A DNA stretch of 64,000 nt from Magallana gigas (GCF_963853765.1 NC_088854.1:11904001-11968000), one strand, 5' to 3'. Positions 27,237-63,356 are shown, counted from the first letter of the stretch. Made by a program: numbers and translations. The notes: a model not told the origin generated them from the sequence alone.

Positions 27237-27416
27237 AAGGGAATCAAATGGCTGCATAGGTGGAGGCATGGCAATCTCCTCAGTCTCATCTGGAGACCTA
27301 TCCCCTTCTGCTTCCAAGGGGGACTCTGACATTACACTGGCCTTGAAAGGTAATGGTTTTGGAGCCTGGGTAGGGACTGCATTAGTAGCCGTTATCACTT
27401 CCTGTTCTCCTTGTTC
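27237..27416 (-). CDS. TRIO: Trio exon, inter-GEF linker
   Basis: EQGEQEVITATNAVP...EEIAMPPPMQPFDSL; ttttag / gtgagt. Confidence 0.87.
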
Positions 27417-28784
27417 CTAAAAATAATAAACTTTCTTATTTTTTTTCCTCACAAAATACCTAATCATAGAAGAACTAAAAACTAATTCTTTACATTTTCT
27501 AAGGACTAAGAACAAAATATATACATTTGTTATCAATTTGTGATTTAATTTTTACGTTTCAGTTCATTGATTGTTTTATCTTTAGCACAATGAATAATAT
27601 ATTTTGATCAAGACTAGATAAGAGAGACATGCTTAATCATAAGCATTGTTCCAAATCAATGTTTAAATAACATGAGATAAAAACACAATGAAAGATTCAA
27701 TGAAAATTGGGTCTTTGGCCATAGCATCAGGAACACTTCATAGTTTAAACACATTCTGCTGGGCTTTGGGGGCCATAAAATGAGTTCAGTCCTATTGTCA
27801 AAGTCAGGCTAAAATCAAAAGTTAGCTAAACTCTGTTATATGGCCCCGAAGCCTGATATATGTTAAACAAATTCCAAAAGATTACACAACACTGGTTATT
27901 GAGCTGTGAAGCTATACATAAACAGATTAACCTAGAGTTAATGTGTTCTTACAACCAGGTTCTGTGTCTGCTTTGATGAATTAAATCCATTTATCACATA
28001 GTATTTACACCAAATAATTAATGACTCAATTACTTGCACATGTCACACTTGGGAGCAAGCTTCTACTTTATAGTTTTGAAATGTTTTTTATAATCTTTGA
28101 CAACCAACTCCAGAGTGCTGTTTTGTGCTGGTTTTACGTTTATTTATTGACTAATATCAGGCAACAATCAATAATTATTGCTTATCTAAGCAACGAATAT
28201 CAACTTATTTAAGTAGGACCTAGAATTTTATTTTGAAAGTATATCATCAATGGCAGAAAATGCAAACAAGACATTAATGTGATCATATATATCAGATCTT
28301 GGAGCACAAACCTCCTGGTAGGGTGCATGTAGTATACACTACACAAAGAACAAAATCATATTTGAGGTCTAAGATGATCTTATGATGAAGTTGTCAACAA
28401 ACAAATTAGAGCTCAAGTGCCAAGATGGCAAGAAAGCCTATGTAGCCATAGCACTTTGAGACAGCAAAGTGCAAAAACTATCTAAAGGTCAAAATTTCAG
28501 TCCAGTTGGTTATCATATCCCACACAACTGTTTGAACTACCAAGACATGAACATCTTTATCAGTACATTGAATGGGGCAAACATTTCAAAATTCTCACGA
28601 TTTTTGCTAGCTTTGAGAGTGTCATCCCCAAAGAGCAAATTAAATAATCATCAACTGTAAATAATACCTGTCAAAGAACTCTTTACTTCTTGCATATCAA
28701 GTCATGACAATTTATATCAAAACAGATTACTGTTACATAAATCAAGCTTCAATTTCCAAAATGAGAAACTGTAAAAATACCTAC

Positions 28785-28880
28785 ATTTGGTACAAAATTA
28801 ATCTGGTACTTGGTGTTTGGTTTTCGCTGGCACGGGCACAGTAGATGAAGAATCTGAACAAGCACAGTGTTGTTCTCCAT
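28785..28880 (-). CDS. TRIO: Candidate alternative first exon with Cys-Pro-Cys motif
   Basis: ataATGg context after an in-frame TGA; MENNTVLVQILHLLCPCQRKPNTKYQINFVPN; donor AAT|GTAGGT in phase 0. Confidence 0.45.
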
Positions 28881-31800
28881 TATGGCTCTCCAGTAACCTC
28901 AACCATACAGATAATCACACCACCCTATAGTGAAATGCAACACCTTTTCTCCTGAATATCAATACTTTATTCCTGAATGCTTGTCTCCATGACAAACTGC
29001 CATCTATTCCCTTTATTAGACCAGATATACTTTGTCACCATTAAACATTTACAGTGCAGTCCAGCTCTACTTGAATCTGACATGCAAAATGGGTTGAGTG
29101 TATTACACAAGAGGTTCCCACTTCCTTCTTAGTGACTTAAGGGGGGTACACTAAAGAAGTGAACCACAGAGTTTAAACAACACTAGTTAAATAAAAAACA
29201 TCACATACACGTGTACTAACACTGGTGTCAGAGTGCATAATATGCAAATCATTGTCTTAACGATATTATCCCAGAAACTTGACTTTGCACTGTGAGATTC
29301 ATTAGTCCATCACCCGTCATTGTTTAATTAGCCATGTCCTTGTGACAACGACAATAGATAAAATCATGATCTAGCCAAGCTTTTAAATAGGTTAATGGCA
29401 GGAATTCCATATTTAGACTGGCCTTCACCATCCGACGGAGATAATTTAACAGTACCCGGTTTACAGCATTACAATGTCTCTAAATATACCTGACCCAAAC
29501 GGGTTGCTGAGGTCCATTAAATTTTTCCAATACACATCACACACTCCATTAAAATCTTTCTTCCAGAATTCTGAGATTTCAAAATACTTCGTTTTTTCTG
29601 GGGGTTAGAAAATCACAAGTTTGGGTGGTACGTTACAGAGCATTGTTTTGTGTGATCTGACATCACTGTAACCTCGCAGGTATTTGATACGTTGAGCTGT
29701 CTGTAGTTTCTCACTGGCCTCTATTGATTAGTTTAGCTGTTTTCATACAATTCACTGTCTAAAAGAACTGTGACAAACCTGTTTGATTCCAACCCAGGTA
29801 GATATATAGACTACCATACAAAAAAACTCTACAATATATTACACAATATCAGACTCAGCAAGCTGGTGATAAGTTAATCTGAAAACACTGTTTTTCATAC
29901 CAAATAGATCTATATCTTGATATTTTCTTAGTGTGGCATTTAAACAGACCAATTTCATGTATGACTTTAAATGAAATATAAATTGAATATGTAAGCACAA
30001 ATATTCTCTTCAATAAATTTGGTTTTCATATCATTCACAAAAGGGTTTCAATTGTATGGGTGTAAGGTTTCTGTGTAACTTTCACAAGTATAATTTTTTC
30101 TACAAAACAACCCCCTTTTGAATATGCAAAAAAAACCCACAAAACTTTGCATCCTTCATAAAGACATGTTTAACGCCTGTCTTCCTTAGTGGATCTGACA
30201 CAGGTTGAATATATATAAAGTACTATTGATGTTGCTTCAGGGTTTCTATGTTAAAACAAGTCTGTTTCTTTTGAAGTGGACTTCTTAGAGCCTTTTAAGA
30301 CAGAACAAATACTACTCATAAAAGAATCCTACTTCCTTCAAATTTTTTTTTCAAGCCAATAACTACTTCAGGGTAGTATATATTTCTGCTTTCTGCTGTT
30401 AAAAAATATTTTTTCTCCCAAGCATTGAGTAAAAATAATGATTCACGGGCTCTAATAGAAGATTATCTTTTCTTTCAAGGATGGCTTGAGGTTTTTTTCG
30501 GGACTACACTGTGCTAAAGAGGATGTTTATGTTCCTGTGCGAGTGTACGTTTAGCATTTTTTTCTCTCTTAGAGCCAGCTTTGGTGATACACAGAAGTCA
30601 TTTAACATTCACTTCCAAAGGTCAAACTGCACCTATGCTGTGCCAGTATTGCAGACAATGTCTTCAGAGTTCACAGCCGAAATGATCCTGATATAATTGC
30701 GACCATAACAACTTACATAAGTAATGATATTATTTACCTCTAGCTCTGACCAATTTATGTCAGATTGGTTTTACAATACGCCACCAGATATATGCAAGAA
30801 GGCACTAGGATGGATATCTAATAAAATTTCTCTGATTCTGCAGCATCCACAATGATGGTAATATTGCCATATACTGTGTATAATGTTTCAAAAATTTCCG
30901 CATTATCTGGTTAAGGTGATCAATAAACCTCATCATGTGATGCTTGTGTGCCACACAACTTGCATAATTTTCAGACAGTACTCCTATCGTCTCTCTTTAC
31001 ATTGGGGTGGTTGTGTGTGAATGGTGAGAAATGTAAACATCACTGATATACATGCACTTTCCAAACTTATTTCTAACATATGCATAATTTATCTGCTTCA
31101 GCTAATCTGAGATCAGTCGGTCTGTTAACCTTATGGTACTAAATGATGTGCAATTAAATCTTTCCTACATAATTCTTGCAAATTATCTTTCCACCTTTTG
31201 CTTTTTGGGCAATGTCTGTGGAATGTTTTGACATCAAAAACACTTCTGTAATATTGTTGATACCAGGTCTTGAACCTAAGCGCTTACTCAGACTTTCAAG
31301 TGCTCACAAAATAATTATGCCACAACCTTTTCAATTTAAAAACAGATAAACAAGGTAGTGTCTCTTATTAACTAATTGCTATCACCCTCCATTTCATGCT
31401 GAGGGCCACATAAGAAAAAAAAAATAATCTTCTTCTCTATATGACCAACCTCACACAACAATGAGGTTAACACAATTTTGATACTTAAAATTCCAAACTC
31501 GTGTGCACTCAGTTAGGCTTTGATTCACATGTTAAGAATTCCCTGGCAAAGAAAAAAACCATCACTATCTACTAATGGTATCCTCTAAAAAAAAAGGTCT
31601 GTTAAAGTACGAAGTCCATTAAGGTTACTAATTTTTAACGACATCTGAGGAAGACACTACGGAAATGGTGGGGAGTTTGTATCTCCTGTGTACTGTACCT
31701 ACTGTAACAATAACTTGTAACAATAACTGAAAAAACCATACATGCTACAGTTGTGTACTGATCTTATCTTATATAAAAAAAAATCATATGTTATGGCTAT

Positions 31801-62028: not shown

Positions 62029-62246
62029 CCTTGGAATCATTAAAATTCTCAGGGGCCAATTTTCGTGGATTCCTTAAAATTTACAAGTTTGTGGGGATGT
62101 AATTTTGTCTACTATATTATACCTACAAAAGGAAAAAGACTTTATAGCCCTAAATTATTAATTTGGAGGATGTAAATTCATGGATGAGAGATACCCATGA
62201 ATTCCACAAAAAAATTGAGCCACCACGAAATCTAATGATTCCACAG
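62029..62246. mobile_element. MITE with imperfect TIRs and TA flanks
   Basis: TA|CCTTGGAATCATTA ... TAATGATTCCACAG|TA. Confidence 0.65.
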
Positions 62247-62965
62247 TACCTGAGAAGAGATATGACCTTGACAGTCTGCAAAAGAATTTCCCTCTCAGCT
62301 TATTTACAATTTACATACAGTAGACACAATAAAAGTGAAACACTGTCAGTGAGGAGCATGCAACCACACATGTACTAACACTTGAGAGTGATACATGCAC
62401 TATCTCTTCCAGACATCACTATTTATTTCCTGGTTTTGTCCCACATACTGTGTTTTGGGGCACAGACCATAGACAGGTACAATAACATCTACACTGAATC
62501 TCCTGTCTATAGGTAACACTATCATCAGTGACCAAATGGGCTGGTCACCATGTAATTGGATTTTATAATGACATCCATTAACTTGTCATATAAAAGAGAC
62601 ACCCTACTCTCTTTAATGTTTATCTGACATGATGCTATTTTATAGATTGACAAAAACAACTGTGTTCAACTTGAAAACATACCGAAGTTTTAAGACTAAA
62701 AGTTCATAAACATCTGAAGAAGTTATGGGGGTTGGGGTGAGGGAGGGGGAATGATGGGGAGGAGTGGTTGTTTACATTGATGTGTACTTAACGATTGTGT
62801 GTGTGGAAGGGGGGGGGGGAGAGTGGGTAGGGTACATACAAGGAAATAAAGCAACTATATAACTTAATTCTACAGCAGTGAATCAAAATCACACGTTATA
62901 CTAAAAATTTAGCACAAAACATTATAAAACTATCATAGAACAATATGATATGACATTTAACTTAC

Positions 62966-63356
62966 CTTCAATATGTGTATAATCTGCATTCTGGTTTATC
63001 TTGTCTGGCTCAGCACTGAACACCCTACGAAAAACGTAAACAATAAGTTCCCACAGTTTCATCAGTCTTATCCATAGGAAAAGACACACCACTGCCACAA
63101 ATCGTAGAATTTTTGACACAATGATTAACATCATTAATACAAAGCTCATAATCTGCATCACAATGATGTTAAAATTTTGGTCTGGCATTTTATCAAAGAG
63201 TTTGCTTCGCCACTGGGTGAAATTGACCCTTCTTTGAGAAGGTCCTGGGGTCCAGGAATGTCGCCATGATTCCCTCCAAGAGCGACGCTGTCTTACTGGT
63301 ACACTCTCGGAATCGGACCCCGAGCGCCTTCTCGGGATAGGAATGTTAGATGGCAT
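62966..63356 (-). CDS. TRIO: Candidate alternative first coding exon of Trio encoding a basic N-terminus plus a ~48-aa hydrophobic segment
   Basis: 130-codon ORF after an in-frame stop. It ends at a consensus donor G|GTAAGT in phase 1, matching the phase-1 acceptor of exon 60171. Confidence 0.7.

What the first reader, a model, noticed from the sequence alone, without database searches (positions are those of the whole stretch)
27237..63356. Trio locus may act as a switchboard of alternative membrane anchors encoded in its introns
Seen: five intronic exon candidates, each phase-compatible with a neighbouring core exon and each encoding a different possible membrane-targeting peptide. They are a long hydrophobic N-terminus (63356), an amphipathic tail after GEF1 (45933), a hydrophobic tail after SH3-1 (34513), an MGxxxS start (33318) and a LLCPC start (28880). 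In the 10.5-kb inter-GEF intron a last exon with polyA signals (34400; 33898-34171) sits just before a first exon (33318). This could split the gene into a GEF1 unit and a GEF2-kinase unit. Known: UNC-73B/E, Kalirin-7/Duet and Solo/Trio8 are such half-gene isoforms in worm and mammals. Inferred: a molluscan version with its own, possibly larger, set of anchors would direct Rac versus RhoA activation to different membranes.
Basis: partly seen in the sequence, partly recalled or inferred. Interest (0 to 1): 0.8.

Follow-up and report, generated by a model that had tools for sequence, protein, structure and literature searches.

The report
Alternative first exons inside oyster Trio
An oyster Trio gene carries at least three, probably four, real alternative first exons inside its introns that give different N-terminal peptides, one strongly hydrophobic. 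The two proposed alternative last exons are not supported, and none of the membrane anchoring has been tested.

Summary
The window holds most of an oyster Trio/Kalirin-type gene on the minus strand (Pfam: two RhoGEF, two PH, Kalirin SH3, I-set, fn3, Pkinase). All five candidates are in the sequence at the stated places and phases.

- **c4 (33318-33229, MGQDVSS...) is confirmed.** In one polyA RNA run, 13 reads join its donor to exon 27416, against 25 for the normal 37934>27416 join. No read enters it from upstream, so it behaves as a first exon.
It has 6 junction reads and dN/dS 0.10 against a distant oyster.
- **c1 (63356-62966) is a conserved coding exon.** dN/dS is 0.15, there are no indels in 391 nt, and homology stops at the conserved GTAAGT donor. 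It carries a hydrophobic helix of about 48 residues. No RNA test was possible.
- **c5 (28880-28785) is probable.** Six of 7 substitutions against a close relative fall at third codon positions, the only such spot in 11.5 kb.
- **c2 and c3 are not supported.** Both evolve neutrally, with no junction reads at c3 and a lost acceptor in the distant oyster.

Alternative starts for a GEF2-kinase unit are real. The GEF1-only last exon is not shown. Membrane targeting is inferred from motifs only. Internal promoters are already known in this family (Delta-Kalirin, Duet, UNC-73E, fly Trio M, human Trio E).

The parts
62966..63356 (-). c1: alternative coding first exon (ATG at 63356, donor GTAAGT after 62966). 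It encodes 130 aa: a basic Ser/Arg-rich head, then a hydrophobic helix of about 48 residues (61-109). It is predicted to join exon 60171.
   Evidence: - Orthologous ORFs at 83% aa identity in a distant oyster, ending exactly at ...YTHIEG|K.
- No indels in 391 nt; substitutions by codon position 20/7/38; dN/dS 0.146, against 1.1-2.0 in the other two frames.
- Single copy in the genome.
- Hydropathy above 1.6 over residues 61-109.
- AlphaFold2 helix 59-114 at pLDDT 86-94.
- No RNA test was possible.
60056..60171 (-). Core spectrin-repeat exon, the proposed acceptor for c1.
   Evidence: The acceptor TGTAG| is conserved in the distant oyster. Conservation starts at the acceptor and ends at the donor. 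The phase fits c1.
45778..45933 (-). c2: proposed tail after GEF1. Most likely a chance ORF in the intron.
   Evidence: Against a close relative there are 8 substitutions by codon position 4/3/1, TGG>TAG four codons before the end, and a 26-nt indel. The stretch upstream of the acceptor is equally conserved. No homologue was found in the distant oyster. Not tested with reads.
38413..38470 (-). Core 58-nt linker exon between SH3-1 and exon 38042.
   Evidence: Joint 38413>38042 with 26 reads in run X20. The loose end at its 5' side matches the end of the SH3-1 exon. Sequence shown.
37934..38042 (-). Core linker exon (KWLTAPKRVSQSK...). Its donor after 37934 is in phase 0.
   Evidence: 25 reads in X20 continue from 37934 into the start of exon 27416. 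dN/dS 0.094 against the distant oyster.
35437..35720 (-). The CDS is 35550-35437 and encodes MDVGKHQKVKKKISVFRMCTCIVKEDDYRYDSKPYTKV. The 5' end near 35720 is approximate.
   Evidence: - 6 reads in X20 run from 35437 into exon 27416.
- Depth peaks at 13.6-17.4x in 35320-35719, against about 4x in the bin upstream.
- No junction enters it from upstream.
- The ATG and ORF are conserved in the distant oyster; dN/dS 0.097, substitutions 2/2/16.
34403..34513 (-). c3: proposed hydrophobic tail after SH3-1. Not supported as a coding exon.
   Evidence: - No joint or loose end at 34513 or 34507, although 25 reads use the 37934 donor.
- The proposed AG (34515-34514) is lost in the distant oyster.
- dN/dS 1.2, substitutions 6/2/6.
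33457..34537 (-). Conserved non-coding block upstream of c4 that also covers c3. A 66-nt core at 34451-34386 is nearly invariant. A TATAAT-like motif lies near 33540. Possibly the promoter and 5' UTR region of the c4 transcript.
   Evidence: 78.5% identity over about 1.1 kb against the distant oyster, with a sharp onset at 34537, while neighbouring intron aligns at 68-73% or not at all. No Rfam match and no fold signal. The function is inferred, not shown.
33229..33318 (-). c4: coding part of an alternative first exon, encoding MGQDVSSQSPSRRGSLTEEGLPTSMFYSEE. The donor after 33229 joins exon 27416.
   Evidence: - 13 reads in X20 run from 33229 into the start of exon 27416.
- No junction enters it from upstream, and read depth continues upstream of the ATG.
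- The protein is identical in a close relative; both substitutions are synonymous.
- Single copy.
28785..28880 (-). c5: probable alternative first exon, encoding MENNTVLVQILHLLCPCQRKPNTKYQINFVPN.
   Evidence: The ORF is intact in a close relative. Of 7 substitutions, 6 are at third codon positions and one gives I>L. The donor changes from GTAGGT to GTAAGT. This is the only place in the 11.5-kb alignment with that substitution signature. Single copy. Not covered by the one reads call.
27237..27416 (-). Common linker exon upstream of DH2. It is the shared acceptor of the canonical exon 37934, of c4, of the 35437 exon and, as predicted, of c5.
   Evidence: The loose-end consensus at 37933, 35436 and 33228 is the reverse complement of the start of this exon. 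Homologues in other oysters are conserved exactly within the exon limits.

Best explanation
The oyster Trio gene (minus strand) uses internal promoters with their own coding first exons, as its relatives do in vertebrates, flies and worms.

1. In the 10.5-kb intron between SH3-1 and GEF2, at least two first exons splice to the common exon 27416. They are c4 (33318-33229) and an unlisted exon (CDS 35550-35437). c5 (28880-28785) is probably a third. The products start just before DH2 and run through PH2, SH3-2, Ig, FN3 and the kinase, each with a different N-terminal peptide of 30-38 aa.
2. In the spectrin-repeat region, c1 (63356-62966) is a conserved coding first exon. It most likely joins exon 60171. 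The product would lack Sec14 and about half of the spectrin repeats but keep both GEFs, with a 130-aa head containing a hydrophobic helix of about 48 residues.
3. c2 and c3 are not exons. c3 lies at the edge of a conserved non-coding block that is probably the regulatory region or 5' UTR of the c4 transcript.

Shown here: splicing of c4 and of the 35437 exon, and purifying selection on c1 and the 35437 exon.

Inferred: the c1>60171 join; use of c5; and that the peptides direct the GEF to membranes. The proposed routes are a helical hairpin or in-plane insertion for c1, N-myristoylation for c4, and a polybasic stretch plus Cys-x-Cys palmitoylation-like motifs for the 35437 exon and c5.
For: Gene identity:
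- Pfam hits on core exons: RhoGEF twice, PH twice, SH3_KALRN (8.7e-28), I-set, fn3, Pkinase.
- Sec14-like and further spectrin-like ORFs lie upstream of the window (read by eye; no Pfam scan of them was run).

RNA (stranded polyA reads laid on 33120-39119):
- Loose ends at 37933 (25 reads), 33228 (13) and 35436 (6) all continue into the first 30 nt of exon 27416.
- The joint 38413>38042 (26 reads) serves as a positive control.
- No junction enters c4 or the 35437 exon from upstream.

Conservation against a distant oyster (core exons about 84% DNA identity, introns 68-78% or unalignable):
- c1: dN/dS 0.146, substitutions 20/7/38, no indels. Homology ends at the conserved donor.
- 35437 exon: dN/dS 0.097, substitutions 2/2/16.

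Conservation against a close relative:
- c4: two substitutions, both synonymous.
- c5: six of 7 substitutions at third positions, unique in 11.5 kb.

Other points:
- All candidates checked (c1, c3, c4, c5 and the 35437 exon) are single copy.
- c1 hydrophobicity and helix.
- c4 fits PROSITE PS00008, G-{EDRKHPFYW}-x(2)-[STAGCN]-{P}, at Gly2 (pattern recalled from memory, checked against the sequence by eye).
- Precedent for alternative N-terminal exons deciding membrane location of a homologous DH-PH: p63RhoGEF (PMC5105084).
Against: - No RNA evidence for c1 or c5. The single reads call could not cover them.
- No spliced c1 fragment was found among proteins of 79-252 aa.
- The c4 and 35437 junctions come essentially from one run (X20), which also has 2-9x intron background.
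- Transcription start sites were not mapped, so 'first exon' rests on the absence of upstream junctions.
- c4 could not be compared with the distant oyster; the contig stops at 33457.
- The c5 evidence rests on only 7 substitutions.
- AlphaFold2 draws the c1 hydrophobic stretch as one long helix, not a hairpin. A single-pass insertion would put either the basic head or the GEF domains on the wrong side of the membrane.
- No lipidation or localisation data exist.
Confidence: 0.72

Rival explanations
1. The alternative first exons exist only to provide alternative promoters for tissue or stage control. Their short peptides have no targeting role, so there is no switchboard of anchors.
For: Alternative promoters with short unique N-termini of unknown function are normal in this family: Kalirin promoters A-D encode 5-38 aa (PMC3048553). 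The motif matches (MGxxxS, CxC, polybasic) are short and common.
Against: The peptides themselves are under purifying selection, which promoter function alone would not require: dN/dS 0.10 for the 35437 exon and 0.15 for c1, and a third-position bias in c5. The c1 hydrophobic stretch of 48 residues, with only conservative I/V/L/F/M changes, is hard to explain without a hydrophobic environment.
Confidence: 0.3
2. c1 is not a Trio exon. It is the first exon of a separate small nested gene for a membrane protein, or it splices to an unrecognised exon in the intron.
For: No junction read was obtained for 62966>60171. Phase compatibility has a one-in-three chance by luck. A 30-nt block at 62424-62395 is 90% conserved in the distant oyster and is unexplained.
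Against: It lies on the same strand as Trio. Between 62966 and 60171 no other block reaches exon-level conservation with an open frame. The phase fits 60171. The position mirrors the Delta-Kalirin promoter, which also lies inside the spectrin region (PMC3048553).
Confidence: 0.15
3. c3 and the conserved block after it are, a terminal exon plus 3' UTR of a GEF1/SH3-1-only isoform, used in tissues that were not sampled.
For: Conservation against the distant oyster starts sharply at 34537, about 25 nt before a conserved AG at 34509-34508. The same stop codon and a hydrophobic 35-codon frame are kept. An AATAAA at 33712 is conserved. Solo/Trio8 is a precedent (PMC3547891, which cites Sun et al. 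2006).
Against: - No junction or loose end at 34513 or 34507, against 25 reads at the 37934 donor, and no read ends or poly(A) tails in the block.
- dN/dS is 1.2, and the best-conserved part runs straight through the stop codon at nucleotide level.
- AATAAA at 33898 and 33744 is not conserved.
- The acceptor has no pyrimidine tract.
Confidence: 0.1
4. All five candidates are chance ORFs of an AT-rich intron.
For: At 35% GC, an open frame of 30-50 codons after any AG or ATG is common. I estimate roughly ten such frames per 9-kb intron. Hydrophobic residues are favoured by T-rich codons. This fits c2 and c3.
Against: Junction reads for c4. dN/dS 0.15 over 130 codons for c1. The substitution signature at c5.
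Confidence: 0.02

Closest known systems
GEF2-only isoforms made from internal promoters: rat/human Kalirin Duet, human Trio E, Drosophila Trio M, C. elegans UNC-73 D1/E
   Same: A first exon lies inside the gene between the GEF1/SH3-1 part and GEF2. It is spliced to the common exons, so the product carries the RhoA-type GEF2 (and here the kinase) without GEF1 (PMC3048553, PMC3547891, PMC11321036, PMC3280986).
   Different: The oyster has two proven and one probable such first exon within one 10.5-kb intron. Each has its own conserved coding peptide. One starts MGQDVSS (myristoylation pattern) and two carry Cys-x-Cys next to basic or hydrophobic residues. I saw no report of lipidation motifs for the known isoforms in the papers read.
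Delta-Kalirin isoforms (promoter in the intron between Kalrn exons 10 and 11)
   Same: An internal start inside the spectrin-repeat region gives a product without Sec14 and without the first repeats (four of nine in Kalirin) but with GEF1 (PMC3048553). c1 sits in an 8-kb intron with about half of the spectrin-coding exons on either side.
   Different: c1 encodes a long 130-aa head with a hydrophobic helix of about 48 residues. Its splicing has not been seen. Homology of the intron position was not tested.
p63RhoGEF / GEFT (ARHGEF25), whose DH-PH is homologous to Trio GEF2
   Same: Alternative N-terminal exons decide whether the GEF sits at the plasma membrane, through palmitoylated cysteines, or in the cytosol (PMC5105084). 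This is the working model proposed here for the GEF2-kinase isoforms.
   Different: It is a different gene, and its palmitoylation has been demonstrated. Here there are only motifs. No sequence similarity between the peptides was tested.
Solo/Trio8 (Trio C) and Kalirin-7: short isoforms made with alternative 3' exons
   Same: They are GEF1-containing isoforms ended by a unique tail. Solo/Trio8 is described as membrane-associated (PMC3547891, which cites Sun et al. 2006).
   Different: Neither c2 nor c3 shows junction reads or coding constraint here. No oyster counterpart was found in this window.

Membership tests
Trio/Kalirin/UNC-73 gene | Two DH-PH modules, SH3 domains, an Ig-FN3 pair and a C-terminal kinase in one gene, preceded by Sec14 and spectrin repeats | tested here: met
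   Pfam on single exons found RhoGEF at 52.5 kb and 20.9 kb, PH at 50.8 kb and 19.9 kb, SH3_KALRN 8.7e-28, I-set, fn3 and Pkinase. Spectrin- and Sec14-like ORFs upstream were read by eye only, and one spectrin exon gave no Pfam hit.
Internal-promoter GEF2-only isoform (Duet / UNC-73E / Trio M kind) | An exon located between the GEF1/SH3-1 part and GEF2 is spliced to the common exon upstream of DH2 | tested here: met
   13 reads (33229>27416) and 6 reads (35437>27416) in run X20.
Internal-promoter GEF2-only isoform (Duet / UNC-73E / Trio M kind) | That exon is a transcription start, not a cassette exon | tested here: inconclusive
   No junction from 37934 or elsewhere enters either exon, and depth continues upstream of the ATGs. 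There are no CAGE or 5' end data, and intron background in X20 is 2-9x.
Internal-promoter GEF2-only isoform (Duet / UNC-73E / Trio M kind) | An open frame from its own ATG into the common exons | tested here: met
   c4, the 35437 exon and c5 all end in phase 0, and exon 27416 starts in phase 0.
Delta-Kalirin-like isoform | A first exon inside the spectrin-repeat region that joins the next core exon in frame | tested here: inconclusive
   The position and phase fit and the exon is under coding constraint. The join 62966>60171 was not observed.
N-myristoylated proteins | Met-Gly start fitting G-{EDRKHPFYW}-x(2)-[STAGCN]-{P} | tested here: met
   c4 reads M-G-Q-D-V-S-S. The pattern was recalled from PROSITE PS00008 and applied by eye. 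It is short and has many false positives.
N-myristoylated proteins | Myristate actually attached by N-myristoyltransferase | not testable with these tools
   Needs metabolic labelling or mass spectrometry.
Membrane-anchored protein (transmembrane or hairpin helix) | A hydrophobic segment of at least 19 residues with Kyte-Doolittle mean above 1.6 | tested here: met
   c1 residues 61-109 score up to 2.5. AlphaFold2 gives a helix over 59-114 at pLDDT 86-94. Substitutions are conservative in the distant oyster. Insertion and topology were not tested.
Solo/Trio8-like alternative last exon (c3) | Spliced from the exon after SH3-1, with a coding tail under constraint | tested here: not met
No junction at 34513 or 34507.
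Kalirin-7-like alternative last exon after GEF1 (c2) | A coding tail under constraint in related species | tested here: not met
   Substitutions 4/3/1 by codon position, a premature stop and a 26-nt indel in a close relative. Junction reads were not tested.

The most novel reading that the evidence does not exclude
Oysters make a membrane-embedded Trio. The c1 isoform would be held in a membrane by a conserved N-terminal helical hairpin of about 48 residues while keeping both GEFs and the kinase. In addition, three lipid-modified starts for the GEF2-kinase half would send RhoA activation to different membranes. These starts are myristoyl (c4), polybasic plus Cys-x-Cys (35437 exon; from memory its MCTCIV...YRY resembles the palmitoylated N-terminus of PSD-95) and CPC (c5). 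An integral-membrane form of a Trio-family GEF has not, to my knowledge, been described.
Probability: 0.25. Interest if true: 0.7.

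Novelty: new variant of a known kind. Interest (0 to 1): 0.5.

Why it matters
Trio and Kalirin couple Rac and RhoA activation to cell shape. In vertebrates, flies and worms much of their regulation is by isoform choice. This result shows that the same logic holds in a lophotrochozoan: internal promoters yield a GEF2-kinase half-gene and a Sec14-less form. 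That points to an old, shared design of the locus.

The new element is that each oyster start encodes a constrained peptide. One has a long hydrophobic helix, and the others carry lipidation-like motifs. If these are anchors, isoform choice would also set where each GEF acts. That would parallel what alternative N-terminal exons do for the related p63RhoGEF. It is directly testable with peptide-GFP fusions.

It also gives concrete corrections for annotating this locus: one extra first exon, and two false last exons.

Tried and rejected
- **The search of protein representatives with exon 27416.** It returned only two short genomic fragments and no full-length oyster Trio, so annotated isoforms could not be compared.
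- **The search for homologous proteins with the 46-aa c4 ORF.** No candidate shared enough words. ORFs this short are probably not called, so the blank means nothing.
- **A mixed profile of five unrelated ORFs as one query.** I checked it by simulation first. It was used to fetch contigs of relatives and it worked. Its E-values are not evidence of homology between the five ORFs.
- **ENA-derived hits P0001, P0004, P0021 and P0022.** No contig was on record for any of them. c5 and c4 could therefore not be compared with the distant oyster. Contigs L023 and L025 stop short of c4.
- **P0023.** This c2-like hit carries only C>T-type changes and looks like a bisulfite-run assembly, not a homologue.
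- **P0027.** This is a bacterial-looking Ser/Thr kinase that was mis-clustered with a c2-like hit. Both P0023 and P0027 were discarded.
- **Conservation profile against the close relative.** It is too flat (93% overall) to map exons. Only the codon-position patterns were used.
- **Pfam on the candidate peptides and ESM Atlas on c1.** Nothing usable.
- **Rfam and folding of the conserved block at c3.** No RNA family and no structure signal (z = 0.1).
- **Reading c4 as an in-frame cassette exon (37934>33318).** The phases would allow it, but no such joint was seen.
- **Reading c1 as a cassette exon.** From either AG upstream of the ATG the length is not a multiple of three, and an in-frame TAG lies at 63401-63399.
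- **Earlier notes of the scan.** Nothing relevant.

Full report
**The locus**

The window is AT-rich (about 35% GC). It carries one large gene on the minus strand. Stop-to-stop frames and Pfam scans of single exons show this order:
- spectrin-like exons at 60.2-54.2 kb
- RhoGEF at 53.3-52.4 kb and PH at 51.0-49.8 kb
- SH3 at 39.9 kb
- a second RhoGEF at 22.8-20.8 kb and PH at 20.5-19.5 kb
- Kalirin-type SH3 (8.7e-28), I-set, fn3 and Pkinase

Sec14-like and further spectrin-like frames lie upstream of the window in the same genome. This is a Trio/Kalirin/UNC-73-type gene. The sequencing runs that hold it are labelled as oyster.

**The observation**

- c1 starts at ATG 63356 and ends at a strong donor (AAG|GTAAGT) after 62966. 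Its one spare base fits the two spare bases at acceptor 60171.
- Exons ending at 49196 and 37934, and the exon starting at 27416, are all in phase 0. The starts or ends of c2, c3, c4 and c5 are in phase 0 too.
- The poly(A) hexamers carry no weight. AATAAA occurs 192 times in the window.
- In DNA of this composition, an open frame of 30-50 codons after some AG or ATG in the right phase is expected many times per intron (my estimate). The sequence facts alone therefore do not separate exons from chance.

**RNA evidence**

I laid three polyA RNA runs and one single-cell run on 33120-39119. That stretch holds c3, the poly(A) signals, c4 and the core exon 38042-37934, which serves as a positive control. 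The libraries are stranded, and all signal is on the gene's strand.

In run X20:
- 26 reads join 38413 to 38042. This revealed a 58-nt core exon (38470-38413).
- 25 reads leave the donor after 37934 and continue with the first 30 bases of exon 27416.
- 13 reads leave the c4 donor after 33229 with the same continuation. It accounts for about 30% of the joins into exon 27416 in that sample.
- 6 reads leave position 35437 with the same continuation. Depth over 35320-35719 is 13.6-17.4x, against about 4x upstream.
- No read enters c4 or the 35437 exon from an upstream exon, so both behave as first exons. Start sites were not mapped, and X20 has 2-9x intron background.
- At c3 there is no junction, no loose end, no step in depth and no read ends.

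**The unlisted exon**

Its frame opens at ATG 35550 and encodes MDVGKHQKVKKKISVFRMCTCIVKEDDYRYDSKPYTKV, in phase with exon 27416. A distant oyster ('species B', Logan runs SRR289255xx) keeps the ATG and the frame. Twenty substitutions fall 2/2/16 by codon position, and dN/dS is 0.097. In the other two frames dN/dS is 2.3-3.0.

**c1**

- The 144-aa frame has orthologues at 83% identity in species B. Identity runs exactly to ...YTHIEG and breaks down after the conserved GTAAGT.
- A 6.4-kb species B contig is collinear with 65142-58266. The c1 block (83% DNA identity) matches the three core spectrin exons (84-88%). Introns align at 71-78% or not at all.
- Over 390 nt there is no indel. Substitutions fall 20/7/38, and dN/dS is 0.146, against 1.1 and 2.0 in the other frames.
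- The sequence is single copy.
- An in-frame TAG lies 42 nt upstream of the ATG, and neither upstream AG would give a cassette of length 3n. The ATG is therefore the likely start.
- About half of the spectrin-coding exons lie upstream. This mirrors the Delta-Kalirin promoter, whose products lack Sec14 and four of nine repeats (PMC3048553).
- The peptide has a basic Ser/Arg-rich head. Residues 61-109 have hydropathy up to 2.5, and changes there are only I/V/L/F/M-type. AlphaFold2 models this stretch as a confident helix (59-114, pLDDT 86-94).
- The join to 60171 is inferred from strand, phase and the lack of any other exon-like block. It was not observed.

**c5**

Only a close relative (93% identity in aligned DNA) could be reached.
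- The frame is intact and the donor improves from GTAGGT to GTAAGT.
- Of 7 substitutions, 6 are at third codon positions and one gives Ile>Leu.
- I scanned all ungapped 96-nt windows and frames of the 11.5-kb alignment for this bias. The only hits lay on c5 itself.
- I rate c5 as a probable coding first exon.

**c4 conservation**

c4 has only two substitutions in the close relative, and both are synonymous. The species B contigs stop 140 nt short of it.

**c2 and c3**

- c2 in the close relative shows substitutions 4/3/1, radical replacements, TGG>TAG near the end and a 26-nt indel. The stretch before its acceptor is equally conserved. No species B homologue was found. This is neutral intron sequence.
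- c3's proposed AG is lost in species B. From the conserved AG six bases later, the frame and stop are kept, but dN/dS is 1.2 (substitutions 6/2/6). The nearly invariant part runs through the stop codon.
- c3 sits at the start of a conserved non-coding block of about 1.1 kb (34537-33457, 78.5% identity) that leads to c4. I read this block as the regulatory region or 5' UTR of the c4 transcript. A TATAAT-like motif near 33540 fits the edge of single-cell read depth near 33520. This reading is inference only. Rfam and folding gave nothing.

**Interpretation**

The inter-GEF intron holds two proven and one probable alternative start for a GEF2-kinase product, and the spectrin region holds another start. 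The 'last exon' half does not hold, so a GEF1-only unit is not shown.

Internal promoters of this kind are known:
- Duet and Delta-Kalirin (PMC3048553)
- Trio E and Solo/Trio8 (PMC3547891)
- fly Trio M (PMC11321036)
- UNC-73 D1/E (PMC3280986)

That the peptides are membrane anchors is plausible but untested.
- c4 fits the N-myristoylation pattern.
- The 35437 peptide has a polybasic run and Cys-x-Cys.
- c5 has Cys-Pro-Cys after a hydrophobic run.
- c1 is strongly hydrophobic.

Purifying selection on the peptides argues that they do something. The best precedent is p63RhoGEF, whose DH-PH is homologous to Trio GEF2. There, alternative N-terminal exons decide between palmitoylated plasma-membrane and cytosolic forms (PMC5105084).

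**Verdict**

Two of the five candidates are real (c1, c4), one is probable (c5), two are rejected (c2, c3), and one real exon was missed. This is a new variant of a known kind, and it gives moderately interesting, directly testable predictions.

Noticed in passing
It has 6 junction reads to exon 27416 and dN/dS 0.10 against a distant oyster. From memory, its peptide (…KVKKKISVFRMCTCIVKEDDYRY…) resembles the dually palmitoylated N-terminus of PSD-95 (MDCLCIVTTKKYRY). This resemblance was not tested.
   Followed up: yes
window 33457-34537 (-): A non-coding block of about 1.1 kb, 78.5% identical to a distant oyster, with a sharp onset at 34537. It has a nearly invariant 66-nt core (34451-34386) and stretches of 93-97% identity at 33730-33457. 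It is better conserved than the coding exons. There is no Rfam hit and no fold signal.
   Followed up: partly
window 36120-37519 (-): In run X20 only, there is an unspliced plateau of 6-9x sense-strand reads, flanked by 2-3x. The stretch is single copy in the genome and alignable at about 70% to the distant oyster (37091-36023). It may be retained intron or an unannotated transcript.
   Followed up: partly
window 38413-38470 (-): A 58-nt core exon between SH3-1 and exon 38042 encodes ...DTEGSTSASPVPKRRAASF.... It is proven by 26 junction reads, and it is needed to keep the frame.
   Followed up: yes
window 62395-62424 (-): A 30-nt island, 90% identical to the distant oyster, lies inside an otherwise poorly conserved intron downstream of c1. 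Its purpose is unknown.
   Followed up: no
protein hits P0023 and P0027: P0023 is a copy of the c2 frame in which every difference is of the C>T type (Pro>Leu/Phe, Ser>Phe, Thr>Ile, Ala>Val). It looks like an assembly of bisulfite-treated reads. P0027 is a 504-aa bacterial-type Ser/Thr kinase that shares a 90% cluster with a 46-aa oyster fragment. Both are database artefacts.
   Followed up: partly
L007:4546-6369 (-): The collection records a 607-aa gene call on the strand opposite to the Trio spectrin exons in the distant oyster's contig. It is probably a call made with a non-standard code on AT-rich DNA.
   Followed up: no
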